Positions 5,061 through 50,910 of a stretch of 51,158 nt of DNA are shown here, piece by piece. The DNA lies in assembly GCF_006345805.1 (NCBI RefSeq), contig NW_021834148.1:1-51158 (forward strand). Direction: 5' to 3'. Every line of letters begins with the position of its first letter. The stretch's first letter is position 1. The DNA is from Octopus sinensis (Eukaryota). A program made the translations under genes and the position numbers. A model generated the notes under the pieces. The model saw nothing but the letters and a program-made list of their open reading frames with translations, was not told the origin of the DNA and ran no database searches.

Positions 5061-5312
5061 GTGTCTTATTCTTGAATATGTGCATTTTAGTGGACAGGAT
5101 TAGAACTGACCATCTCTACAGTGTATTTTTGTAATGTTTTTCATCTATAACCAGTTTGATCAGAGATGCTCATCGGGTGTCTTATTCTTGGATGTGTAAT
5201 GATTTCAAATCTGGATTGATAAATACCAATGGAATACTGGAGTCAGGTTAATTGATTGCACCTATCCCCCAAAGCTGCTTCTGTTAGAAATTACGAATAA
5301 ATATGACATATT

Positions 5313-5925
5313 TACTTACTTGTACTTGTGGTGACATTCACCCTGGGCAGGTTGAGTCAGCTTCTTCTACTCGTGGAAGAAGTTTCGTGGGAATATGTGG
5401 ATTTCACAAGTGGTCCCCAACAATCCCGCATGTAGAAACATCCTGTTTGCCACAGATTGTCCGCAGACGCAGGAACAGAATGACCGAGGAGCCGCCGGTT
5501 GCCGAAACAGACACTCCGAGGATTTTCACCAGTGTATTTTTGTAATGTTTACATCTATAACCAGTTTGATCAGTGATGGTCATCGGGTGTCTTATTCTTG
5601 GATGTGTAATGATTTCAAATCTGGATTGATAAATACCAATGGTTGTGGCCCTAATACCACTCGGTGTTTGCCGCAGATTGTCTGCAGACGCAGGGAAAGA
5701 ACGACCAAGGAGCCGCCGGTTGCCGAAACAGACACTCCGAGGATTTTCACCAGAGCCCCGTCTGCCGGGTTGTGGCCCTAATACCACTCGGTGTCAGACC
5801 AATCCGCCTTGGGTAGCCCTACCAGGAACCGGAGTTCTCGACGGCATAGCGCTGACACTACCCGTTGCCAGCGTCCCCACCACGGTAAGGAAGGGATGGA
5901 CTTTGGGGACCCGACATATTTGCTA
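5313..5925 (-). mobile_element. Bipartite non-autonomous RTE derivative (RTE-like 5' head + CAAGTA tail), internally rearranged
   Basis: Tail 5313-5366 matches the 3' end of the RTE fragment ending at 17060. Head carries CCTTACCGTGG...AGGGCTACCCAAGGC, resembling BovB/Expander 5' ends as I recall them. Confidence 0.6.
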
Positions 5926-11926: not shown

Positions 11927-13288
11927 AATGTATTGGTGTGAATTGCAAGAAAACAGCTGGGTTTCTTTAACATTTTACATAGTTCAACTGCAAAATAGGA
12001 ATTTTGAAAGAAGTTTCTATGAAACTAGTTTTTAAACATCGAATGGGGGTCCACCAGAATAAAATAGTAATCAAAGGGGTCCATTGATAAGAAATGGTTG
12101 AGAACCCCTGCTTTAGATGTATGTATTGGTTATGTATTGCAAGAAACAGCTGGGTTTCTTTCTCTAACATTTTACATTGTTCAACCTACACAAGTTAATG
12201 TGTGGAAAACAAAATAGGAATTTTGAAAGATTTTTCTAGGAAACTAGTTTTTAAACATCGAATGGCTGTGGGGGTCCACCAGAATAAAAGAGTAATCAAA
12301 AGGGTCCATAAATAGAAATGGTTGAGAACCCCTGGGTTAAATGGTGAAAGAGGCAGGAATTTGTGATTGGAATGAAGTGTAACTAGTGAGGGAGGTGATT
12401 GGTGTGAGCTCTTTAGGGAGAAAGATGGTTGGTGTGAGAGGTGGCATAAATATGAAGGGTTATTTTTCGTGGGGTGACTTTGTTGCTGTGAGAGATGGCA
12501 TGAGGCACAAGGGAGAGAGATAGTTGATGTAGGGTGCAGCGTACTTTGAGATTGATTGGGGAGAGGTAGTTGGCATAAGAGGCAGCATAAGGTATGAGAC
12601 ACTAAGTGTGAAACGGCAGCATGGGGTATGGTTTTTTCTCTTTTTTTGGAGGGTTCAAGAGTAATGTGGTGGTAGGGAGGTGGGTGATATGAAGGGTAGC
12701 ATATCGTATAAGCTTTTTAGGGAGAGAGAGAGTTTCTGCGAGACATGGTCAGTGGAAAACCTGGCACTATAGTTTATATTAACCATTTACTTCCAGCTTT
12801 GGCAATCTGATAAGCACTTTACTCCCTTAACCCTTTAGCATTTAAACCGGCCATATCCGGCCAAAAATCTTCTACCTGTTTTATGTTCAAACTGGTCAGA
12901 TCTGGTCTCTCACACCAACCCTACAATATTGTTTTAAAAATTAACAGCTACCTCATCAAAATCTCATAACTACAAGATGACCCAATAGGCTGGTGGCAGT
13001 GGTGTGGAGGATATTCTCGACCACTGAAAATCTTAGCATCCACAACCATCTGGCTATTCTCATTTCCTGGAGTAAAGAAAGTTTTTTTTTTTAAATATTT
13101 GACCAGTGTTCACCGGTTATGAGAGTGTTCAATATCTATCACTATATCACTATGTATTGTTAGATAAATTAATAAATATAAAGGATCAAATCACATTAAC
13201 ATCATGAAATTATAGTTTACGTATTTACTAGCATCTTGTATTCTTTTGTTTGTTATTTGACTGTGGCCATGCTGGAGCACTGCCTTAA

Positions 13289-18168: not shown

Positions 18169-18662
18169 TATGCTAATATTTTTTTGTATTTGGTTTAAGA
18201 ACCTGAGACTAGTGCCAATGTCAAGGGTCCATCCCCTGTAGCCAGATCAAGTGGAGACTTATGTACAACCAACATAGATAGATATGTTGGCTGAGGCTTT
18301 GACCTAGTGGAAGTAGATCGTTGACAGCTGAATGGAACATTGTACCATCTTGAGTGGTGTTTTGCATTGAGGTGACCTTTTGACATTTGACCGAGCCATT
18401 GACAAACTGAGATATGTTCCAGGAATGTCAGTCTATCTCACTGGCTATGTATAAACTATAGGTGTTTATAGAGCAGCTGGTGAACAGGGGTGGAAGCTGT
18501 GAGAACCAGAAAGTATGTGGTGAGGAAGCAATGGCCTCGACAGCACAGTCACACCTGCACCTTAAATATTGCATCCTTGGGTGGACTCAAGCCACCACAT
18601 GCGCACGTGCGCGCGCACACGCAAACATACATGCATAAGTGTGTATGGTCTAGTGGTTAGGG

Positions 18663-19287
18663 CAGTGGTTTTCAACCAGGGTTCCGCAAGAAGTTACAAA
18701 ACTGCTAAATTCGGCAGTAATTTTTACTTCTCCTGTGCAGATATGTGTGCATAAGACTATTAAATTATTGCACACGGGTTCCTCGAGCCAGTGGAATGTT
18801 TCCTTGGGGTTCCGCTCCAGCAAAAAGTTTGAAAAGCACTGATATAGGGGATTCACAAAATCAACATTGATACAGGTATACTGCTGTGAACACAAATGGG
18901 TAGGGCTAAAAAGAGATCAAACTGTCCAGGCAGTGCAACAGGAAACTAGGGATACCTGACTGGCTGAATATATAGGGCAGTGGTTTTCAACCAGGGTTCC
19001 ACGGAACCTTAGGTTTCCGCCAGTACAGTTCAGGGGTTCCGCAAGAAGTTAGAAAACTGCTAAAATCGGCAGTGGTTTTCAACCGGGGTTCCACGGAACC
19101 TTAGGGTTCCGCCAGTACAGTTCAGGGGTTCCGCAAGAAGTTACAAAACTGCTAAAATCGGCAGTAATTTTTAATTCTCCTGTGCAGATATGTGTGCATA
19201 AGACTATTAAATTATTACACAGGGGTTCCTTGAGCCAGTGGAATGTTTCCTTGGGGTTCCGCTCCAGCAAAAGGTTGAAAAGCACTG
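18663..19287 (+). mobile_element. Composite hAT (Buster-like) insertion: MITE E1 (18663-18841) + 136-bp captured DNA + MITE E2 (18978-19287)
   Basis: TIRs CAGTGGTTTTCAA/TTGAAAAGCACTG. The 8-bp TSD GGTTAGGG flanks the whole unit (18655-18662, 19288-19295), which interrupts the tRNA head of a SINE. Confidence 0.85.
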
Positions 19288-19908
19288 GGTTAGGGTTTCA
19301 CACTAACAATCACGAGATCGTTGTTTCAATTCCCAGACCGGGTGGTGCATTGTGCACTTGAGCAAAAACACTTCATCTCACATGACCCTATGCAATCACT
19401 TTGACACCTGATGCATGACACACCATGCACCTGTTCAGACCATGTCGATTTGATGGAGGGAATGAGATAATGTGCAGCGCATGCATTCGATCACCATAAA
19501 CAAATCATTTGTGCAGGTCATTCGACAATTCTGAACAGTCAGAGGTGCAGTTCACCCACTGGACCTTAGGCGCAGGAGTGGCTGTGTGGTAAGTAGCTTG
19601 TCTACCAACCACCAACGCTTACACCAACCTGCACCAACCTATAATTAATTACTACCTCATCTATTTACTCGCCAAATATGTTCCTCAACAACTCCAATGC
19701 CAACGTCAGCCACATTCATTTACCATTCACAACAGTTGTATCTTTGTTAGAGACTCTTGTAGCCAATATCACCACTCAACCATAACGACAACAACAACAT
19801 GAACCAAGCCAGCCAGAAGGCCTCTGTCTTTCTATGATACTGTTTAACTTGTTAGAAATAGCAGCCAATACCCCTTTCATTTCATGCTCTACCTACATAT
19901 ATATATAT

Positions 19909-21229: not shown

Positions 21230-23707
21230 TGCAAAGTCCCTTCCAGACCTAGAATTACGTGGTGGTGGAATAGTGCAGTAGATAAAGCCATCTGTGAAAA
21301 GAGACGGGCCTGGAAAGCCTGGAAGGATGGGGGCAGCAGGGAACTGTACCAGATAGCCAAAAGGGAGGCTGGGCGGCAGGTATACATTGCCAAAGATGTA
21401 GCAGAAAAGAAGTTTGCCAATGTCCAGCGTCGCGAGGATCAAAGAGCTGAAGTATTTCGGATTGCCAGACAGTGTGTCAGAGAAAATAGCGATGTTATAG
21501 GAGAGAAATGTGTCCGCATGGATGATGGGGCACTTGCTTTTACTACTAGTGAAAAGAAAGAGGCTTGGAGAAGCCATTATGAAAGACTGCTGAATGAGGA
21601 GAATGAATGGGAGGAGGAGAGCCTGCCAAATGTTGACCCAGTAGAGGGACCAGCTACCCGAATAGACAGCTCCCTTGTAGATAAGGCAATTAAGGATATG
21701 AAACCAGGCAAAGCCCCTGGCCTATCAGGAATCACTGCTGAGATGCTTAAAACAGCTGGCTATGTGGGCTATGCCATAGTCACCCGCATTGTAAACCAGG
21801 TAGTTCACAATGGAGTCATACCCAATGACTGGTGCAGCAGCACCATAGTCAACTGCTACAAGGGTAAGGGTGATGCTCTAGATAGAAATAACTACAGAGG
21901 TATCAAACTGTTGGACCAGGTGATGAAGGTCTCAGAGAAGGTCATAACCAATCTCATTAGGGAGAGAATTTGTTTAGATGAAATGCAGTTCGGTTTTGTA
22001 CCAGGTAGAAGCACCACTGATGCTATATTCCTGGTCCGACAACTGCAGGAGAAGTACCTAGCTAAAGATAAACCCCTCTACATAGCTTTTGTAGACTTGG
22101 AGAAAGCCTTTGACAGGGTTCCCCGTTCCCTTATCTGGTGGTCGATGCGGAAACTGGAGATTGAAGAATGGCTAATAAGGGCTGTACAGGCTCTATACAG
22201 AGAGGCTGTCAGCAAGTTAGGATTGGCAACGAATATAGTGAAGAATTCTGGGTAGAAGTAGGTGTGCACCAGGGCTCAGCCCTCAGTCCCCTTTTATTCA
22301 TCATAGTCCTTCAGGCAATAACAGAGGAATTCAAAACGGGATGCCCCTGGGAGCTCCTCTATGCCGATGACCTAGCTCTCATAGCAGAATCACTACCGGA
22401 ACTAGAAGAGAAATTTCGGGTGTGGAAGCAAGGGTTGGAATCAAAGGGCCTTAGAATAAATGTAGCAAAGACCAAAGTATTAGTAAGCAGCAAGAGGTAC
22501 TCAGCACACATCCCTCGGGTAGGTGGCCCTGCTCAACCTGTAGGAAAGGTACAGGTAGAAACTCCATAAGATGCACCCAATGTAAGTTATGGACACATAA
22601 GAGGTGCAGCAACATTAAAGGGAAATTAACAGATAAGATAGCTTTCATGTGCGGCAGATGCACAGGGACAATAGACACAACAGACACTCAGAAAACAGAT
22701 TCCATCACACTCCAGGGAGAGAAACTAGAAGTAGTTGATAGTTTCCGCTACCTGGGTGACCAAGTTAGTAGCGGAGGTGGATGCACAGAGAGTATCACCA
22801 CTAGAATACGAATAGCCTGGGCAAAGTTCAGAAAGCTCCTACCCCTACTGGCAACAAAAGGTCTCTCCTCAGAGCAAAAGGTAGATTGTATGATGCATGT
22901 GTGCGAACTGCCATGCTTCACGGTAATGAAACATGGGCTGTGACTGCAGAAGACATGCGTAGACTTGAAAGAAATGAAGCTAGCATGATCCGCTGGATGT
23001 GTAGTGTCAGTGTGCACGCAAAACAGAGTGTGTATCCTGAGAGAAGTGCTGGATATAAGAAGCATCAGATGTGGTGTGCAAGAGCGACGCTTGCGATGGT
23101 ATGGTCATGTGCTGCGGATGGATAAAGAGAGATGTGTGAAGAAGTGCCACTCCCAAACAGTTGAAGGTATCAGGGGGAGAGGTAGACCCAGGAAGACATG
23201 GGATGAGGTGGTCAAGCATGACCTCAGAGCATTGGGCCTCACTGAGGCAATGGCGAAGGACCGAGATCTCTGGAGATATGCTGTGACTACAAAGACCCGG
23301 GCTGCTTTCTGCAGCAATTCCACATACCCCCTACCCATTCTAAGTACCCCGGATCCCCAAAGTACCCCGGATCCCCAAAGTACCCCGGATCCCCAAAGTA
23401 CCCTGGATCCCCAAAGTACCCCGATCCCCAAAGTACCCCGGACCTCGTTGCCCCCGTGCCACTGACACGTTAAAATGCTCGAACCGATCGTGACGATGCC
23501 GGACCCTCCGGCCCCTGTGCAGGTGGCACGTAAAAAGCACCCAATCCACTCACGGAGTGGTTGGCGTTAGGAAGGGCATCCAGCCGTAGAAACTCTGCCA
23601 GATTCAGACTGGAGCCTGGAGCGGCCCCTGGCTTCCCAGACCCGGTCGAACCGTCCAACCCGTGCTAGCGCGGAAAGCGGACGTTAAACGATGATGATGA
23701 TGATGAT
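21230..23707 (+). mobile_element. 5'-truncated RTE-clade LINE with RT domain, frameshifted; 3' UTR and (GAT)n tail
   Basis: Motifs KAPGLSGI, NYRGIKLL, QFGFVPGRSTTDAIF, FVDLEKAFDRV, GVHQGSALSP, LLYADDL, FRYLG, RRLRWYGH; frameshifts near 22215, 22515 and 22870. Confidence 0.95.
23342..23443 (+). repeat. 18-bp minisatellite (AAGTACCCCGGATCCCCA) x about 5.7 at the end of the RTE ORF / 3' UTR
   Basis: Directly visible. Confidence 0.95.
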
Positions 23708-24171: not shown

Positions 24172-24506
24172 AGACCCCCTTCGGTCAGACACTGACCATG
24201 GGTTTTGCACCTAGAGAGTTACCCTCTGAGGCACAAGCCTGGGCAAGGTTGTTTTATGGAAGACCAGCAGTCGCCCATGCATACCGGCCTCCCCTCTCCA
24301 CGTCACTGATGTTGTCCAAGGGAAAGGCAAGGGCCGATACAGCTTGGCACCTGTGACGTCGCAACTCATTTCTACAGCTGAGTGAACTGGAGCAACGTGA
24401 AATAAAGTGTCTTGCTCAAGAACACAACACGCAGCCCAGTCCAGAATTCGAGCTCACAACCTCACGATCGTAAGCTCGACGCTCTAACCACTGAGCCACG
24501 CGCCTT
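24172..24506 (-). mobile_element. tRNA-derived SINE family H
   Basis: Reverse-complement match to 50573-50910; A-box TGGCTCAGTGG and a B-box-like motif. Confidence 0.85.
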
Positions 24507-24959
24507 GATAAAAAAAGAATGTATTCAATACTAGTGTAATAGATTTTAAATAGACTAATGGCGAAGCCTTTACAAGGCTGCTCAACTGATTCTGTCATCT
24601 TGAAAAAATAAATACTGGGCATTAGATCATATTGTATAACAGAATGGTCACAGGTAGACTTAGTTGTTCAATGTCCGCCCATTGGTTAGTCATGGTTGGG
24701 TTGTCTTTGATCATGAGTAAGCAACCTATCTACTGGTATTTGACCTAGTTAGGTTTTGGACTTTGACATAATGGAGCCACTGGGAGTGGTTAATCTCTGT
24801 GCCCCCTCTCTCTCCACCAGCCAGTAATGAACGGCAGGGGTGGTTGAGGTGGCAGTCACTGTTTGCACTCAGTTGAACTCACTCAGAAATATTTCCTCCC
24901 TGGAGCGCACAGATTATTTCTTAAATGAATCAAGTCAAATCGAATCAAATCAAATAGAT

Positions 24960-37147: not shown

Positions 37148-37228
37148 TGTGTATATATATATATATATAGCCTGTGTGATGTCCTACACATTCATGTATT
37201 TAATTTCTCTCTCTCTCTCTCTCCCCAG

Positions 37229-37394
37229 ATGGACATTGTGTTGTCAATGGCACATAAAGTTGATGATCGGTTGGCTCCTAACTGTAATTCCGTTATTCCA
37301 AATAAGGAAAACATCATCGATAATCTTATAATAAAGTCTTCAGAAATTGTCAAATTAGAAGCCAAAAATGTAGATTTGGAGTATGCAGTAAAAG
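37229..37394 (+). CDS. ATXN2: Ataxin-2 exon 7 (MDIVLSMAHK...VDLEYAVK; Lsm)
   Basis: (ct)n ccccag / gtaagg; phase 0 to 1; matches the DLVLDAAH...MDSSYAKR segment. Confidence 0.95.
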
Positions 37395-37628
37395 GTAAGG
37401 TACTTTACCATCCTCCTTTAGCCCCCTTCCTCGGCCTCTCTCGTCTCTGGTTGGCCTGATTGTTCAATTAGGTGTTTGTTCCTTTATTTTCTTTTTCCTA
37501 AAGCCAGGAACTTTTCAGCACCCCCTCCTTGTATATATATGCATACCTTACTCCCTCCCTGTTACTCTCAACATTTATTTTCACGTGAGTAGCCATGAAG
37601 TTCCTCTATAGAAAAACAAAACACCTGT

Positions 37629-37864
37629 TCTGTACTGGCGGAACCCTAAGGTTCCGTGGAACCCCGGTTGAAAACCACTGCCGATTTTAGCAGTTTTCTA
37701 ACTTCTTGCGGAACCCCTGAACTGTACTGGCGGAACCCTAAGGTTCCGTGGAACCCCGGTTGAAAACCACTGCCGATTTTAGCAGCTTTCTAACTTCTTG
37801 CGGAACCCCTGAACTGTACTGGCGGAACCCTAAGGTTCCGTGGAACCCTGGTTGAAAACCACTG
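37629..37864 (-). mobile_element. hAT MITE left end only, about 92-bp unit x2.5
   Basis: GGTTGAAAACCACTG repeated three times; no right TIR. Confidence 0.85.
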
Positions 37865-38342
37865 CTCTATATATTCAGCCAGTCAGGTATCCCTAGTTTC
37901 CTGTTGCACTACCTGGATCCTTCTTTTATACTTTTTTTTATCACCTAACATAAAGTCACTTCCCATTTGCAGAAGGACCCCACATGCTCGAAAGGGATTG
38001 TAGCCTTCTGAGCTGCACAGCAACCTCCTTGCTGTTAATACCATGTAAAAAATTTACAAAGAACGCTGGAAAGTAGTTGGCATTTGGAAGAGTACCTAAC
38101 CACAGAAACTATTGGGTCATTCCATAAATAATGCGTTGTTTTTTTTTTTCATTTGAATTAACTAAAAGTCAGAGGGGAATGGGATAAACTACCTGCATCA
38201 ACTTGCTATCAAAGCAGGTAATAATTTTACCCTGCCCTTAGTGCGAGTTTTAAAGAGTGCAGTTTGATTTTAAGTTTTTTCATGCTAGCATGGAGAACAG
38301 ACGTTAAACGATGATGATGATGATATTTTCTTCTCTTTCCAG

Positions 38343-38458
38343 ATAATTATTCTGAATCTTCTTCCCGATTTAATGGCCAGTTAGGTGATAAAGACTTGAC
38401 CCCATGGGAAGGGGACTTAGAAGACGGGAAAATGACCAGTCTCGATAGTGATGCATCT
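38343..38458 (+). CDS. ATXN2: Ataxin-2 exon 8 ((D)NYSESSSRFNGQLGDKDLTPWEGD...DAS)
   Basis: ttctctttccag/gtaagt; phase 1 to 0; NG...KDLxPW motif. Confidence 0.95.
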
Positions 38459-38480
38459 GTAAGTATTTTTCATGTTTTAA

Positions 38481-39193
38481 CCCTTTCAATACCAACCCGG
38501 CTGAAACCGCCTCTGGTTCTGTAGTACAAATGTCTTGTTTTCCTAAGTTTTGAATTAAAATCTTCCACCAAACCTTAGTTACAATTTATCTTCCTAACAC
38601 CAGCTTATTGATAACAAAGTTATTTTACTAAATTCTTTGTAATATTTAAAATTAATTGAAAGAAACACAGAGCATCTCAACAGAAATACAGTAACAGAAG
38701 GGTTAAAGTCACCATGATATTTTTAACCCTTTTGATACCAACTCGGCTGAAACCACCTCTGGTTCTGCAGTACAAATGTCTTGTTTACATAAGTCCTGAA
38801 TTAAAATCCTCCACCAAACCTTAGTTACAATTTATCTTCCTAACACCAGCTTATTGATAACAAAGTTATTTTACTAAATTCTTTGTAATATTTAAAATTA
38901 ATTGAAAGAAACACAGAGCATCTCAACAGAAATACAGTAACAGAAGGGTTAAAGTCACCATGATATTTTTAACCCTTCTGATACCAACTCGGCTGAAACC
39001 ACCTCTGGTTCTGCAGTACAAATGTCTTGTTTACATAAGTCCTGAATTAAAATCCTCCACCAGACCTTAGTTACAATTTATGTTCCTAACACCAACTTAA
39101 TGATAACTAAGTTATTTTACTAAATTCTTTATTATTTTTAAAGTAATTGAAAGAAACGGAGAGCATCTCAACAGAAATACAGTAATGAAAGGG
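38481..39193. mobile_element. Three tandem TTAA MITEs (second family), 246-bp period
   Basis: Copies start at 38481, 38727 and 38973, separated by identical TTAA-AGTCACCATGATATTT-TTAA; solo inverted copy at 49058-49279. Confidence 0.9.
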
Positions 39194-39423
39194 TTACACA
39201 ATTTGTCTCTACCTTTGTTTTTTTTCCAGACCTTTTTTTATCTTGGACTATCTAATGCATCCTTTCTTGTTTAGCCCCAGGTCTACTATTTCAGCTATCC
39301 TGAATTTACTCAAGCCATGGCTTATGTATATCTGGGGTTACATTAATCAATGTGTCCTTCTTTACAGTTGTGGTCCATGCCAGTGGCATGTAAAAAAAGC
39401 ACCCTTTGAATTTGGGGCCTCAT

Positions 39424-40202
39424 AGAGCTGGCAGAAATGTTAGCAAGCCGGGCGAAATGTGTAGCCGTATTTCGTCTACTGTTACGTTCTGAGTTCAAAT
39501 TCCACCGAGGTTGACTTTGCCTTTCATCCTTTCGGGGTTGATAAATTAAGTACCAGTTACGCACTGGGGTCGATGTAATCGACTTAATACCTATGTCTAT
39601 CCTTGTTTGTCTCCTCTGTGTTTAACCCCTTGTGGGTAATAAAGAAATAGGTATTTCGTCTGCCGTTACGTTCTGAGTTCAAATTCTGCCGAGGTCGACT
39701 TTGCCTTTCATCCTTTCGGGGTCGATAAATTAAATACCAGTTACGCACTGGGCTCGATGTAATCGACTTAACCCGTTTGTCTGTCCTTGTTTATCCTCTC
39801 TGTGTTTAGCCCCTTGTGGGTAGTAAAGAAATACGTATTTCGTCTGCCGCTACGTTCTGAGTTCAAATTCCACCGAGGTCGACTTTGCCTTTCATCCTTT
39901 CGGGGTCAATAAATTAAGTACCAGTTGCACACTGGGCTCGATGTAATCAACTTAACCCGTTTGTCTGTCCTTGTACGTCCCCTCTGTGTTTAGCCCCTTG
40001 TGGGTAGCAAAGAAATAGGTATTTCGTCTGCCGCTACGTTCTGAGTTCAAATTCCACCGAGGTCGACTTTGCCTTTCATCCTTTCGGGGTCAATAAATTA
40101 AGTACCAGTTGCACACTGGGCTCGATGTAATCAACTTAACCCGTTTGTCTGTCCTTGTACGTCCCCTCTGTGTTTAGCCCCTTGCGGGTAGAAAAGAAAT
40201 AG
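39424..40202 (+). mobile_element. SINE family B tetramer, 184-bp period
   Basis: GTATTTCGTCT at 39467, 39651, 39835 and 40019. Confidence 0.95.
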
Positions 40203-40921
40203 CTAACGGTAAGTGACGGAGACCTTTGGTGATATGCTGTATTTGAGAAGATCTGTCAGGCCCAGTGAAACCGTAGTTGTGGCCAGTGCTGGTATCTTGT
40301 ATTTGGCACCCATTCCACACTTGTAGTGGTTGGCATCAGGAAGGGCATCCAGCCATAGAAACCAAGCCAAAATCAGACTGGAACCTGGTGCAGCTTACCG
40401 GTTTCAGTCAAATCATCTAACTCGTGCTAGCATGGAAAGCAGGTGTTAAAATGATGTTGTTTAGCCCTAGCTCAGTCCTGAATCCAGCATACCTGTGACC
40501 ATCCGGTTATTTAGATACAGTACATCTAGGATTACATTGTCTAATGTATCCTTCCGTGTTGTTTAGCCCCGGATTAGTCTGGTCCATCACACCTGATCAA
40601 AGGTGTTCCACCTGTGTGATCATCCTGTCGTTATACACTATGTATTCAGGCATAGTGTATCTAGGACTACATTATCTGTGTTGTTCCTTTCCTTGGTTAG
40701 CCTTAGGTCAGATCCTGATCCAGCAGACTTATACTCATAATCAAAGGTGGTCCAGCTGTGACCATCCTGTCTTTAGACATTGTATATCATGGACAATAGT
40801 ATCTAATGTGCCCATACTTGTTGCATTTGCTGTTGAAGCCAGCCTTTGATCAAAAGTATTCCAACCATGACCCTCCCATTGACTTTTTTTTTTTTTTTTT
40901 TTGTGAACTTCCCTCTTTCAG

Positions 40922-41010
40922 AATGGTTGGGATCCTTCCGACATGTTCAGAACTAATTATGAGCAATTCAATGTGATATCTACATATGATGAAAACTTAT
41001 CACAATACAC
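40922..41010 (+). CDS. ATXN2: Ataxin-2 exon 9 (NGWDPSDMFRTNYEQFNVISTYDENLSQY(T); LsmAD)
   Basis: ctctttcag/gtgagt; LsmAD signature NGWDxxDMFxxN...STYD. Confidence 0.98.
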
Positions 41011-41039
41011 GTGAGTTCTCCACTGGTTTTCTTTCTTTC

Positions 41040-41430
41040 TCTCTCTGTCAATCCCCCTGCCTGTCAGTCCCCCTGTCTGTCAGTCCCCCCTGTCTGTCAG
41101 TCCCCCCTGTCTGTCAGTCCCCCTGCCTGTCAGTCCCCCTGTCTGTCAGTCCCCCCTGTCTGTCAGTCCCCCCTGTCTGTCAGTCCCCCCTGTCTGTCAG
41201 TCCCCCCTGTCTGTCAGTCCCCCCTGTCTGTCAGTCCCCCCTGTCTGTCAGTCCCCCTGTCTGTCAGTCCCCCCTGCCTGTCAGTCCCCCCTGCCTGTCA
41301 GTCCCCCTGCCTGTCAGTCCCCCCTGCCTGTTCAGTCCCCCTGTCTGTCAGTCCCCCTGTCTGTCGGTCCCCACTGTCTGTCGGTCCCCCTTGTCTGTCA
41401 GTCCCCCTGCCTGTCAGTCCCCTTGTCTGT
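41040..41430. repeat. 16-17-bp C-rich minisatellite, about 23 units (CTGTCAGTCCCCC[C]TG[T/C])
   Basis: Directly visible; fills most of the 499-bp intron 9. Confidence 0.97.
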
Positions 41431-41509
41431 ATTTCTCCTTCTCGTCCGTTTTTAATCAAGTTTTCATATGTGTGTCCCCCCCCTTTTTTTTTCTCTTCCT
41501 CTGTCGCAG

Positions 41510-41731
41510 GACTCCATTAGAAAGACGTGATACTAAGGAATATAAAGAGCGAGAAGAAGCTGCTGCAAAACTGGCTGATGAAATTGAGAGAAGTGACAGT
41601 TACAAACACAGGATATCGTTAGAGAATGGCGAAGGGGAAGACGAGGAGAAATTTGCAGCCGTCGTCAAACCAGAGCAACAACAACAACAACAGCAGCAGC
41701 AGCAACAACAAAGCAGTAACGCCCCTGGAAG
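41510..41731 (+). CDS. ATXN2: Ataxin-2 exon 10 (TPLERRDTKEYKEREEAAAKLADEIE...EEKFAAV + Q12; LsmAD)
   Basis: tcgcag/gtatgc; phase 2-2; LsmAD motif AxxLAxEIE...EEKFxAV. Confidence 0.98.
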
Positions 41732-41850
41732 GTATGCTTAAAACAGTTTATATGATTTTAAGCTTGTCGCTGTCTTTCTTTTTAGCCCGACCCATTTGTG
41801 TTCACACCAGTATCCCTGTATCGATGCTGATTTTTGTGAATCCCCTATAT

Positions 41851-42038
41851 CAGTGCTTTTCAAACTTTTTGCTGGAGCGGAACCCCAAGGAAGCATTCCG
41901 CTGGCTCGAGGAACCCCTGTGCAATAATTTAATAGTCTTATGCACACATATCTGCACAGGAGACTTAAAAATTGCTGCCGATTTTAGCAGTTTTGTAACT
42001 TCTTGTGGGACCCCTGGACTGTACTGGCGGAACCCTAA
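41851..42038 (-). mobile_element. hAT MITE lacking its left end
   Basis: CCCTATAT|CAGTGCTTTTCAA; the body matches E1/E2. Confidence 0.85.
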
Positions 42039-42105
42039 TTCAGTTATCATTGAATGCATTGTCGTTTTAATTGTTGTTTATTTCTGTCTCTGTTTGGTTT
42101 TCCAG

Positions 42106-42887
42106 AAATGCAGTCCCCCTGCGCAAAGTCCCCAGTCGAGGCGGAATGGTAGGCACCGGTAGTACTGGTGTCCGTGGGAGCAGCCTGTCTCCGAACAACA
42201 TGAGCACTAGTCAAGCACTGAGCAACAGTAGTAGTAGTAGTATTAGCAGCAGCAACAGTAACAGCATTAGCAGCAGCAGTAGTATCAGCAGCAGCAGCAG
42301 CGTTAGCAGCAGTAACAACACAACCAACAACATCACTACTACTACTACTACTGCAACTAGCAGCAACAACAGCAACCGGGAGGCTCTGTGCAATCCAAGC
42401 CAGAGTGGTGTCGGTGGTGGTGGTGGTGGTGGTGGCGGCGTTGGTGGAGGAAGTGGTGGAGGTGGTAGTGGCGGCAGTAGCAGCAGCGGAGGCAGTGTCG
42501 TCGGAGGAGGGGGTGTGAGCAGCAACAGCAACAGTGCCGCTACGAACAGCAGCAGCAGTGGTGGTAGTAGTAGCAGCAGCATGGCCGCGTCGTCCGTGAC
42601 CGCACCGACCACCATGACCCACCATCATCAGCAACAGCAGACGCCGTCACAGCAGCAGCCGCCGGCCACGGCCACCGTCGCCGATCCGAGCCCGCAGACG
42701 TCTAATGTTGCCCAGCAGATAACCTCAATGTTGCCACTGCAACTTCAACAGAATCACAGTAATTACAACCCTCCTCGAGAAGCGCTGCCCTCACAGCCAC
42801 AGTCCCTGCCCCTACAAACGCAAATCGCAAAGAGCCACGACTCCCCTTCCGATTCATCAAATATGGAACAACTCAAAGTGAATGGAT
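42106..42887 (+). CDS. ATXN2: Ataxin-2 exon 11 (782 nt, Ser/Gly/Asn/Thr/Gln low-complexity region)
   Basis: ggttttccag/gtaagt; phase 2 to 1 fits both neighbours; stop-free. Confidence 0.85.
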
Positions 42888-50460: not shown

Positions 50461-50572
50461 CTAAGGATGTGCAGGCTTCTGGACATGTTCTATGATCTTT
50501 GTGAACAAAAGGTTTGTCCAAATGGTGTCATTTGTTCCCAGTCCTTCATGTAACCATATCCAAGCTCTCTTG

Positions 50573-50910
50573 AAGGCGCATGGCTCAGTGGTTAGAGTGT
50601 CGAGCTTACGATCGTGAGGTTGTGAGCTCGAATCCCGGACCGGGCTGCGTGTTGTGTTCTTGAGCAAAACACTTTATTTCACGTTGCTCCAGTTCACTCA
50701 GCTGTAGAAATGAGTTGCGACGTCACGGGTGCCAAGCTGTATCGATCTTTGTCTTTCCCTTGGATAACACTGGTGGCGTGGAGAGGGGAGGCCGGTATGC
50801 ATGGGCGACTGCTGGCCTTCCATAAGCAACTTTGCCCGGACTTGTGTCTAGGAGGGTAACTTTCTAGGTGCAATCCCATGGTCATTCATGACCGAAGGGG
50901 GTCTTTACCC
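50573..50910 (+). mobile_element. tRNA-derived SINE family H
   Basis: GGCGCATGGCTCAGTGGTTAGAG head; matches 24172-24506. Confidence 0.85.

What the first reader, a model, noticed from the sequence alone, without database searches (positions are those of the whole stretch)
18655..19295. Composite hAT insertion carrying intron fragments from two sites about 19 and 23 kb downstream in the same gene
SEEN: the layout is GGTTAGGG [E1] ATATAGGG...ATATAGGG [E2] GGTTAGGG. The outer 8-bp TSD brackets both MITEs, and removing the unit restores a continuous tRNA-SINE head (TGGTCTAGT-GGTTAGGG-TTTCAC...TTCAATTCC), so it inserted as one piece. The 136-bp interior is a reverse-complement mosaic. 18842-18914 matches 41777-41850 (about 6 differences), 18915-18924 is a 10-nt filler, and 18925-18977 matches 37865-37917 (2 differences). 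Each fragment is still attached to the same MITE end it abuts at the donor site. E2 also shares the diagnostic left-end duplication with the 37.6-kb copy. KNOWN: hAT/Buster elements make 8-bp NNNTANNN TSDs, and maize Ac/Ds alternative transposition yields composite insertions carrying flanking DNA. INFERENCE: this is a fossil of alternative transposition, or of a dimerised MITE-plus-flank circle, in an animal gene.
Basis: partly seen in the sequence, partly recalled or inferred. Interest (0 to 1): 0.8.

Follow-up and report, generated by a model that had tools for sequence, protein, structure and literature searches.

The report
Two-MITE composite insertion carrying intron scraps
Two small non-autonomous hAT-type transposons, which sit on either side of one exon of an ataxin-2-like animal gene, were copied as one piece into a SINE about 19 kb upstream, and the copy still holds 110 bases of the intron DNA that lay between them; this is a tidy natural fossil of a process known mainly from maize genetics, not a new kind of element.

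Summary
Window 18663-19287 is one insertion into a tRNA-derived SINE. It is bracketed by a single 8-bp duplication, GGTTAGGG, and removing it restores a SINE that aligns without gaps to two other copies. It consists of two non-identical MITEs in direct orientation around 136 bp. That interior is ATATAGGG, 65 nt matching 41777-41842 (reverse complement, 5 substitutions and 1 indel), 10 nt of filler, 45 nt matching 37873-37917 (1 substitution), then ATATAGGG. Each fragment is still attached to the MITE end it abuts at its source.

The captured DNA lies between the two source MITEs and is joined to their inner ends. That is macrotransposon geometry (outer ends of a directly oriented pair), not the reversed-ends composite-insertion geometry of maize Ac/Ds. 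A dimer of one element is also unlikely, because E1 and the 41.85-kb copy share a derived terminal change that E2 lacks.

My best reading is local macrotransposition followed by a 3.86-kb internal deletion. The main rival is homology-directed copying into a resident MITE.

Two things remain unexplained. Both source copies now lack their outer ends, and their inner 8-mers are near-identical.

It is a new member of a known kind, of moderate interest.

The parts
18640..18662 (+). Left part of the tRNA-derived SINE that received the insertion (A-box region TGGTCTAGTGGTTAGGG)
   Evidence: The joined flanks align gaplessly with SINE copies at 50560-50700 and 24380-24515.
18655..18662 (.). Outer target-site duplication GGTTAGGG, left copy
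   Evidence: Identical 8-mer at 19288-19295. The SINE consensus has a single GGTTAGAG here.
18663..18841 (+). E1: 179-bp MITE with a single left unit. It has a 40-nt deletion between GGGTTCC repeats. Its right end GTTTGAAAAGCACTG is as in the 41.85-kb copy.
   Evidence: Alignment; TIR scan.
18842..18849 (.). Inner 8-mer ATATAGGG, a copy of the 8-mer next to the right end of the 41.85-kb MITE (41843-41850, CCCTATAT on +)
18850..18914 (-). a': captured intron fragment, reverse complement of 41777-41842 (5 substitutions, 1 indel)
   Evidence: E=4e-17; alignment.
18915..18924 (.). 10-nt filler GATCAAACTG at the a'/b' junction. Its reverse complement CAGTTTGAT matches 38260-38268 (9/9), which lies inside the missing interval in the same orientation.
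   Evidence: I estimate roughly a 3-5% chance of such a match, so this is only suggestive.
18925..18969 (-). b': captured intron fragment, reverse complement of 37873-37917 (1 substitution)
   Evidence: E=4e-19.
18970..18977 (.). Inner 8-mer ATATAGGG, a copy of the 8-mer next to the left end of the 37.6-kb MITE (37865-37872, CTCTATAT on +; 1 difference)
18978..19287 (+). E2: 310-bp MITE with the 92-bp left-end unit twice (18978-19069, 19070-19161). It keeps the ancestral right end GGTTGAAAAGCACTG.
   Evidence: TRF; alignments.
19288..19295 (.). Outer target-site duplication GGTTAGGG, right copy
19296..19400 (+). Remainder of the interrupted SINE (B-box region GTTTCAATTCCCAGACCGGG and tail)
37604..37611 (.). 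CTCTATAG, a third near-copy (7/8) of the inner 8-mer. It lies 18 nt outside the truncated end of the 37.6-kb MITE and may be that element's other TSD copy.
   Evidence: The chance of such an 8-mer within 40 nt is 2.4%.
37630..37864 (-). Source copy E_B: only the left-end part survives, as 2.6 tandem 92-bp units ending in the left TIR. The right half is missing.
37865..37917 (+). 8-mer CTCTATAT plus intron fragment B, the source of b'
37918..41776 (+). 3,859-nt interval between the two source fragments, absent from the composite. It contains the LsmAD exon (41510-41731) of the ataxin-2-like gene.
   Evidence: Exon identified (PF06741). Colinear with the related-species locus L001. Splice sites read.
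41777..41850 (+). Intron fragment A, the source of a', plus 8-mer CCCTATAT. It starts 46 nt after the exon's 5' splice site.
41851..42038 (-). Source copy E_A: only the right-end part survives, from the right TIR to CTGTACTGGCGGAACCCTAA. The left end is missing. It overlaps E_B's surviving part by 20 nt of element sequence.

Best explanation
Two copies of a roughly 200-400-bp hAT-type MITE sat in direct orientation in the two introns flanking the LsmAD exon of an ataxin-2-like gene. E_B was at 37.6 kb and E_A at 41.85 kb.

Proposed steps:
1. A transposase synapsed the outer ends of the pair (the left end of E_A and the right end of E_B).
2. It moved the whole MITE-intron-exon-intron-MITE unit, about 4.5 kb, as a macrotransposon.
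3. The unit landed about 19 kb upstream in the head of a tRNA-derived SINE and made one 8-bp duplication, GGTTAGGG.
4. The source stayed in place, as happens when hAT elements jump from replicated to unreplicated DNA.
5. The new copy then lost 3,859 nt of its interior. This could have happened during synthesis-dependent gap repair after a later excision, or by ordinary end joining. What remains is 65 nt next to E1's right end, 45 nt next to E2's left end, and a 10-nt filler.

Shown:
- The single-piece insertion and its TSD.
- The identity and orientation of each fragment and its attachment to the same MITE end as at the source.
- The direct orientation of the sources, with the captured DNA lying between them.
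- E1 and E2 are not two copies of one element.

Inferred:
- A transposase made the move.
- The sources were complete at the time.
- The interior was once full length.
For: - One insertion: a single 8-bp TSD sits at the outermost MITE termini, and the SINE is restored gaplessly when the unit is removed.
- The target fits the family. GGTTAGGG fits nnnTAnnn plus G/R/S, seen in 57 unique family flanks, and the same 8-mer is the flank of an unrelated copy, L049. Canonical single copies L057 and L089 have 8-bp TSDs.
- Continuity of MITE and flank: 237 nt at 93.7% across E1, the 8-mer and a', and 250 nt at 96.8% across b', the 8-mer and E2.
- Geometry: in element orientation the sources read [E_A right end]-8mer-a'...3.86 kb...b'-8mer-[E_B left end], and the composite reads [E1]-8mer-a'-filler-b'-8mer-[E2]. 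It is the same order and orientation with the middle missing.
- E1 and E_A share the derived right-end change GGTTG to GTTTG. E2 keeps GGTTG, which equals L089 and gives a perfect TIR.
- E2 and E_B share the A-then-G pattern of left units.
- The reverse complement of the filler matches 9/9 at 38260-38268, inside the missing interval, colinear and in the same orientation.
- The retained tracts measured from the outer ends are similar in length (about 252 and 363 nt), as expected for synthesis from both ends.
- Copies differ from their sources by 2-9%, so the event is old and not a chimeric assembly.
- Precedent in maize Ac/Ds: macrotransposons mobilise up to 100 kb (PMC3260210), and they excise and reinsert while the original copy is retained (PMC9910405).
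Against: - Neither source copy has its outer end today. E_A lacks its left end and E_B lacks its right half. The pair could not move now, and their completeness at the time is an assumption.
- The two inner 8-mers are identical in the composite and match 7/8 at the sources. For two independent insertions of this family that has a probability of about 0.45% (position-matrix estimate), and 0.5% among observed pairs. A third near-copy lies at 37604. The two surviving halves are complementary with a 20-nt overlap. The simple 'two independent MITEs' picture explains none of this.
- No full-length version of the composite, and no empty-site allele, could be examined.
- No transposase of the family was found.
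Confidence: 0.5

Rival explanations
1. Homology-directed copying into a resident MITE. Under this reading a solo MITE already sat in the SINE with TSD GGTTAGGG. A break inside it, or its excision, was repaired by synthesis-dependent strand annealing or gene conversion from the nearest cis copies.

The left end copied from E_A (right half) and ran off through the right terminus into the 8-mer and a'. The right end copied from E_B (left units) and ran off through the left terminus into the 8-mer and b'. Alternatively, the whole interval was copied and later deleted. The two new strands were then joined by end joining with a short filler.
For: - It needs only the half-elements that exist today.
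- Each broken end can find homology in only one of the two halves, which explains why two different templates were used.
- E1's 40-nt 'deletion' sits exactly at a GGGTTCC microhomology. That is where an invading end could have annealed to E_A.
- E2's second unit switches from the E_B-like state to the canonical GTTAC state at the same point.
- The filler matches sequence inside the template interval, as in template-jumping repair.
- The same class of event could explain why MITE plus a few flanking bases seems to be present twice at the source locus.
Against: - Normal strand annealing would restore a clean single MITE, because the copied right half is complementary to the other broken end. The composite therefore requires a failed annealing step.
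- It needs an extra, unobserved resident element.
- The outer TSD and perfect termini are explained equally well by one transposase-made insertion.
Confidence: 0.25
2. Termini from two elements, or from one element on sister chromatids, insert into unreplicated DNA. The elements and their flanks are re-replicated, the forks abort and the ends fuse, giving a composite insertion.
For: - The overall form matches the composite insertions of PMC4270019: transposon termini at both ends next to one 8-bp TSD, element-plus-flank segments inside, and an internal junction with little or no homology.
- The near-identical inner 8-mers would be the two TSD copies of one source element.
Against: - In that model the captured flanks lie outside a pair of ends that face each other. 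Here they lie between the source copies and on their inner ends.
- For the single-element (sister-chromatid) version the two fragments should flank one MITE. They are 3.86 kb apart and in the reverse order.
- In the single-element version E1 and E2 should be the same element, yet E1 and E_A share a derived terminal change that E2 lacks.
- No tandem duplication or reciprocal deletion is visible in the window.
Confidence: 0.07
3. A small circle (MITE plus about 50-70 nt of each flank, closed by end joining) either dimerised and was transposed, or recombined with a resident MITE.
For: - A circle b'-8mer-[MITE]-8mer-a'-filler integrated by recombination into a MITE gives exactly the observed order.
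- The size (about 450 nt) is in the range of small extrachromosomal circles.
- The inner 8-mers are identical in the composite.
Against: - It requires the two fragments to flank one element at the source, which is not the present arrangement.
- The dimer version predicts E1 = E2. They differ in unit number, in the 40-nt deletion and at a polarised terminal site.
Confidence: 0.05
4. It is not a capture at all. Either the 'fragments' are part of a dispersed repeat or of a longer member of the family, or the structure is an assembly artefact.
For: The genome of this species could not be searched, so uniqueness is shown only within 51 kb.
Against: - Neither fragment occurs elsewhere in the window.
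- Neither occurs in 88 loci (about 0.4 Mb) that carry family members from other genomes.
- Canonical copies are about 195-220 bp with nothing like a' or b' inside.
- Fragment A begins 46 nt after a conserved coding exon and runs into it at the source.
- The copies differ from their sources by 2-9%, which a chimeric assembly of the same reads would not give.
Confidence: 0.05

Closest known systems
Ac/Ds macrotransposons of maize (Huang and Dooner 2008; Wang et al. 2022, both as cited in PMC3260210 and PMC9910405)
   Same: - Two hAT elements in direct orientation.
- Transposase uses the outer ends.
- The intervening host DNA moves with them.
- There is one 8-bp TSD at the new site.
- The original can be retained, and the hop is local.
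   Different: - Here both partners are MITEs of about 200-400 bp in an animal.
- Only 110 of about 3,970 nt of the intervening DNA survive.
- The source copies have since lost their outer ends.
- The event is an old fossil inferred from sequence, not observed genetically.
Composite insertions from reversed-ends transposition with re-replication (Zhang et al. 2014, eLife, PMC4270019)
   Same: - Transposon termini bracket element-plus-flank segments.
- The segments are fused at an internal end-joining junction.
- There is an 8-bp TSD.
   Different: - The captured flanks are on the wrong side for that model: they are inner, not distal.
- No linked tandem duplication or deletion is seen.
Internally deleted hAT elements made by interrupted gap repair, and Ds-like elements with filler DNA (Ds-del and Ds-l4 classes, PMC3260210). 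The abortive gap repair model is cited from my own knowledge of Rubin and Levy 1997.
   Same: - Retention of both ends.
- Loss of the middle.
- A short filler at the junction that resembles nearby template sequence.
   Different: The deleted unit is a two-element composite with host DNA inside, not a single autonomous element.
P-element hybrid element insertion and ectopic gap repair in Drosophila (my own knowledge; the term appears in PMC3744419)
   Same: - It shows that animals do undergo transposition with ends from different copies.
- It shows that ectopic cis copies are used as repair templates.
   Different: - It belongs to a different superfamily.
- It is documented in crosses, not as a fixed genomic fossil with captured intron DNA.

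Membership tests
hAT-superfamily non-autonomous element (MITE), Buster-like target | 8-bp target-site duplication | tested here: met
   GGTTAGGG on both sides of the composite. L057 has GTCTACAC/GCCTACAC and L089 has CTTTTGGA/CTCTTGGA.
hAT-superfamily non-autonomous element (MITE), Buster-like target | Central TA in the target (nnnTAnnn) | tested here: met
   In 57 unique left-end flanks from 88 loci, T is 77% at -5 and A is 70% at -4. There is further bias to G, R and S at -3 to -1.
hAT-superfamily non-autonomous element (MITE), Buster-like target | Short terminal inverted repeats beginning CAG | tested here: met
   CAGTGGTTTTCAACC / GGTTGAAAAGCACTG, 15 nt, 14/15 complementary.
hAT-superfamily non-autonomous element (MITE), Buster-like target | A cognate hAT transposase with matching termini | tested here: inconclusive
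   There was no protein-database hit to element-derived ORFs. The loci contain no transposase ORF, only host genes. The species' genome is not available.
Macrotransposon (two-element composite hAT transposon) | Two elements of one family in direct orientation at the source | tested here: met
   E_B (37630-37864) and E_A (41851-42038) are both on the minus strand.
Macrotransposon (two-element composite hAT transposon) | The DNA carried is the inter-element DNA, joined to the inner ends | tested here: met
   The order is E1 right end, 8-mer, a', then b', 8-mer, E2 left end. This is the same order and orientation as at the source.
Macrotransposon (two-element composite hAT transposon) | One TSD at the outer termini of the pair at the new site | tested here: met
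Macrotransposon (two-element composite hAT transposon) | Source elements possess the outer termini that were used | tested here: not met
   Both outer ends are absent today. Whether they were present at the time cannot be told from this window.
Macrotransposon (two-element composite hAT transposon) | The whole inter-element segment is present in the transposed copy | tested here: not met
   Only 65 + 45 nt of 3,970 remain. A secondary deletion has to be assumed.
RET composite insertion (Zhang et al. 2014) | Captured segments are the flanks distal to two termini that face each other at the donor | tested here: not met
   The captured segments lie between the donors, on their inner ends. The definition is from PMC4270019.
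RET composite insertion (Zhang et al. 2014) | Internal junction made by end joining (0-9 bp homology) | tested here: met
   A 10-nt filler with no homology at 18915-18924.
Sister-chromatid transposition or dimerised circle of one element | Both copies descend from the same element, and the two fragments flank that element at the source | tested here: not met
   E1 and E_A share the derived GTTTG while E2 has the ancestral GGTTG. The fragments are 3.86 kb apart in reverse order.

The most novel reading that the evidence does not exclude
The source locus may itself be a product of aberrant transposition or templated repair.

Observations behind this reading:
- The right end of one MITE piece and the left end of the other face inwards.
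- They sit across the LsmAD exon and carry what looks like one and the same target duplication (CCCTATAT / CTCTATAT).
- The two pieces are complementary halves of one element.
- A third near-copy of the 8-mer lies just outside.

This could record one of two events. One is a reversed-ends transposition back into the excised inter-element circle, which would have permuted intron DNA around an exon. The other is a copy of 'MITE plus about 10 nt of flank' made by templated break repair. The composite would then have followed. If so, the window holds a multi-step natural series of alternative hAT reactions in an animal gene.
Probability: 0.15. Interest if true: 0.7.

Novelty: new member of a known kind. 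Interest (0 to 1): 0.45.

Why it matters
Movement of host DNA between two closely linked hAT elements is well documented in maize crosses. It is rarely seen as a fixed, base-resolved fossil in an animal genome, and gene-fragment capture is described as rare for the hAT superfamily (PMC3260210).

Here the pair brackets a coding exon, so the unit that moved would at first have carried a spare exon of an ataxin-2-like gene into an upstream region. That is the raw material for exon duplication or shuffling, even though this copy has since been deleted.

The locus also gives a concrete test case. It could help separate transposase-made composites from homology-directed copying between MITEs, once related genomes or population data are available.

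Tried and rejected
1. Same-species or orthologous empty sites.
- The LsmAD exon peptide found only a related species (85% identity, locus L001) and a more distant one.
- L001 is colinear at four blocks, but its introns are too diverged to show the empty sites. It has no copy of the MITE.

2. Family members through spurious ORFs. There was no protein hit.

3. Autonomous partner. There is no transposase ORF in the 88 metagenome loci.

4. Filler templated from 41743-41756 (ACAGTTT..GAT). Such a 7-mer match is expected by chance about 6-20% of the time (my estimate from the k-mer counts), so I did not rely on it. The 9/9 match at 38260 is better but still only suggestive.

5. The two source sites as copies of an older repeat. 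The arms on either side show no similarity beyond the 8-mer and a few adjacent bases (local alignment score 12 against a shuffle mean of 11).

6. Reversed-ends reinsertion with 37604-37611 as an old TSD. This predicts another copy of that 8-mer inside 37918-41776, and none is there.

7. Star phylogeny of the three right halves. Pairwise distances are all about 4.5-5%, so distances alone do not separate the models. Only the polarised terminal site does.

8. A hairpin at the shared breakpoint. There is a 7-bp stem, CGGAACC/GGTTCCG, but the fold is only modestly better than shuffles (z = -1.8). About 8 of the 57 family copies lack this segment (my reading of the listing; a cruder automatic count gave 12, with false positives). 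It is therefore a plausible deletion hot spot, not a proven one.
Full report
WHAT IS THERE

- GGTTAGGG (18655-18662).
- E1 (18663-18841).
- ATATAGGG (18842-18849).
- 65 nt, a' (18850-18914).
- 10 nt, GATCAAACTG (18915-18924).
- 45 nt, b' (18925-18969).
- ATATAGGG (18970-18977).
- E2 (18978-19287).
- GGTTAGGG (19288-19295).

E1 and E2 both begin CAGTGGTTTTCAACC and end ..TTGAAAAGCACTG, a 15-nt inverted repeat. A self-comparison of the window finds this element family at only three places: here, at 37630-37864 and at 41851-42038.

The alignment to 41.8 kb runs without a break from inside E1, through its right end and the 8-mer, to the end of a' (18679-18914 against 42013-41777; 93.7% of 237). 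The alignment to 37.8 kb runs from b', through the 8-mer and the left end, into E2 (18925-19174 against 37917-37668; 96.8% of 250).

Taken alone, a' matches 41842-41777 with 5 substitutions and one 1-nt indel (E=4e-17). b' matches 37917-37873 with one substitution (E=4e-19). Neither occurs anywhere else in the window.

ONE INSERTION INTO A SINE

Joining 18662 to 19296 gives TGGTCTAGTGGTTAGGGTTTCACAC...GTTTCAATTCCCAGACCGGG. This aligns without any gap across the junction to two other copies of a tRNA-derived SINE, at 50560-50700 and 24380-24515. Those copies have a single GGTTAGAG at that point. The whole 633-bp unit therefore entered as one piece and duplicated 8 bp.

THE ELEMENT FAMILY

A scan of public metagenome contigs for the left end (CAGTGGTTTTCAACCNGGGTTCC) returned 88 loci from animal DNA in host-associated samples. 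They are relatives from other species, at most 87% identical.

- The 57 distinct left flanks show T at -5 (77%) and A at -4 (70%), that is nnnTAnnn, with further bias to G, R and S at -3 to -1.
- GGTTAGGG itself is the flank of an unrelated copy, L049.
- The nearest complete relatives, L057 and L089, are about 195-220 bp. They have one left unit and 8-bp duplications.
- None of the loci contains anything like a' or b'. The fragments are therefore not the normal interior of the family, as far as can be tested without this species' genome.
- No transposase was found. 'hAT, Buster-like target' rests on TSD length, the central TA and the termini only.

THE SOURCES

The gene is ataxin-2-like and on the plus strand.
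- The exon at 41510-41731 encodes an LsmAD domain. Its peptide hits PF06741 proteins, 85% identical in a related species.
- An SM-ATX exon lies near 37226-37400.
- The next exon starts at 42106.
- The related-species locus L001 is colinear at 37226-37399, 38327-38464, 40913-41017 and 41507-41675.

The two source MITEs thus bracket exactly one exon. E_B lies about 230 nt into the upstream intron. E_A lies 111 nt (plus its 8-mer) into the 374-nt downstream intron. Both are on the minus strand, so they are in direct orientation.

Both are incomplete.
- E_B keeps only the left-end part: 2.6 tandem copies of a 92-bp unit ending in the left terminus.
- E_A keeps only the part from the right terminus to CTGTACTGGCGGAACCCTAA.
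- No exon was identified upstream of 18.6 kb, so whether the composite lies in an intron of the same gene or just upstream of it is not settled.

GEOMETRY AND WHAT IT EXCLUDES

Written in the element's own orientation:
- The source region is [E_A ... right end]-ATATAGGG-a'-(3,859 nt including the exon)-b'-ATATAGAG-[left end ... E_B].
- The composite is [E1]-ATATAGGG-a'-filler-b'-ATATAGGG-[E2].

The composite is therefore the source segment with its middle missing and with complete elements at both ends. The termini next to the outer duplication are the outer ends of a directly oriented pair. That is the definition of a macrotransposon.

In the maize composite insertions produced by reversed-ends transposition and re-replication, the captured DNA is the flank on the far side of two ends that face each other (PMC4270019). 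Here it is the near side, so that model does not fit the present source arrangement.

Models that start from one element (sister-chromatid transposition or a dimerised circle) need the two fragments to flank a single MITE, and need E1 and E2 to be the same element. Using L057 and L089 as outgroups, and the symmetry of the inverted repeat, gives this result:
- E2's right end GGTTGAAAAGCACTG is ancestral.
- E1 and E_A share the derived GTTTGAAAAGCACTG.
- E1 and E2 also differ in unit number and in a 40-nt deletion.

This is one polarised site, so the exclusion is not absolute.

AGE AND ARTEFACT

The copies differ from their sources by about 2-9% in the flanks and 3-6% in the elements. The three right halves are about 4.5-5% apart. 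This is an old, fixed event and not a chimeric assembly of identical reads.

THE INTERNAL JUNCTION

The 10-nt filler has no convincing nearby template at the breakpoints. Its reverse complement, CAGTTTGAT, does match 9/9 at 38260-38268. That is inside the missing interval, in the same orientation and in colinear order between B and A. The chance of this is roughly 3-5%.

If real, whatever made the junction had access to the missing interval. That could be a deletion within a once full-length copy, or template-jumping synthesis.

The retained tracts measured from the outer ends are about 252 and 363 nt. This is compatible with synthesis from both ends that stopped early.

BEST EXPLANATION AND MAIN RIVAL

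I favour this sequence, with confidence about 0.5:
1. Two linked MITEs acted as a macrotransposon.
2. The unit made a local hop of about 19 kb into a preferred target in a SINE.
3. The source was retained.
4. The interior then lost 3.86 kb.

Maize gives direct precedent for each step (PMC3260210, PMC9910405).

The main rival (about 0.25) is that a solo MITE already sat in the SINE and was repaired from the two cis half-elements, each broken end using the only half that carries matching sequence. Synthesis ran off into the flanks and the ends were joined.
- In its favour, this rival needs only what exists today.
- It accounts neatly for E1's 40-nt gap at a GGGTTCC microhomology and for the state switch in E2's second unit.
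- Against it, it needs an unobserved resident element and a failure of the normal annealing step.

Both readings agree on the higher-level statement: the composite is a copy of the MITE-intron-MITE segment with most of the middle gone. I hold that statement at about 0.75.

WHAT REMAINS UNEXPLAINED

- The two inner 8-mers are identical in the composite and match 7/8 at the sources. For two independent insertions of this family the probability is about 0.45% from the position frequencies, and 0.5% among observed pairs.
- A third near-copy, CTCTATAG, lies at 37604-37611, 18 nt outside E_B's truncated end. The chance of this is 2.4%.
- The sequence after E_A's truncated end starts TTCAG, like the ATTCAG that follows the 8-mer at 37873.
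- The two surviving pieces are complementary halves overlapping by 20 nt. The overlap falls at a short palindrome (CGGAACC TTAG GGTTCCG) where E1 and about 8 of the 57 relatives also have deletions (my reading of the listing).
- The arms beyond these few bases are unrelated.
- A reversed-ends reinsertion with 37604 as an old duplication predicts a further copy of that 8-mer inside the interval, and none is present.

Possible readings:
- Two deletion derivatives of one unit 'MITE plus about 10 nt of flank' that had been copied 4.2 kb away by templated break repair.
- A reversed-ends reinsertion into the excised inter-element circle.
- An abortive second macrotransposition, in which the cleaved segment was trimmed back to the palindrome at both ends and re-ligated in place.

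I cannot choose between these with one window.

VERDICT

This is a new member of a known kind and of moderate interest.

Noticed in passing
window 37604-37872 and 41843-42050: Three near-identical 8-mers occur: CTCTATAG at 37604, CTCTATAT at 37865 and CCCTATAT at 41843. The two truncated MITE pieces are complementary halves overlapping by 20 nt. Both left arms end in TC, and both right arms start with (A)TTCAG. This looks like one insertion unit present twice or split, and it is not explained.
   Followed up: partly
window 21518-23465 (+): ORFs with reverse-transcriptase motifs (FVDLEKAFDRV, YADDLALIAES). This is a fragment of a non-LTR retrotransposon lying between the composite and its sources.
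   Followed up: no
window 11990-12335: Two tandem right-end pieces of a second hAT-like MITE family (termini CAGGGGTTCTCAACC on the minus strand at 12096-12110 and 12320-12334). Their flanks CTTTAGAT and GGTTAAAT also have a central TA.
   Followed up: no
window 38475-39196, 39467-40202, 41044-41430: Three tandem arrays lie inside the interval between the sources: 246 bp x 2.9, 184 bp x 4.0 (SINE-like unit) and 17 bp x 23. The last lies immediately upstream of the LsmAD exon.
   Followed up: no
L007-L094 (JGI metagenome contigs such as Ga0056115_*, Ga0209568_*, Ga0056116_*, Ga0056132_*): The same MITE left end (23 nt, exact) occurs in 88 contigs of host-associated metagenomes. They sit beside ordinary animal genes (for example an SLC13-like transporter in L057 and a glutamate-receptor-like ORF in L042). 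The family is therefore widespread in other animals.
   Followed up: partly
L049, about 540-580: An unrelated family copy from another genome has exactly the same flanking 8-mer, GGTTAGGG, as the composite. This points to a recurrent preferred target.
   Followed up: no
window 5135-5180 and 5545-5590: Two copies of a local repeat about 410 bp apart, each containing the 10-nt filler sequence (reverse complement) exactly. This is probably coincidental.
   Followed up: no
window 41676-41715 and 42221-42300: CAA/CAG (polyglutamine) and AGC repeats occur in the coding exons of the ataxin-2-like gene.
   Followed up: no
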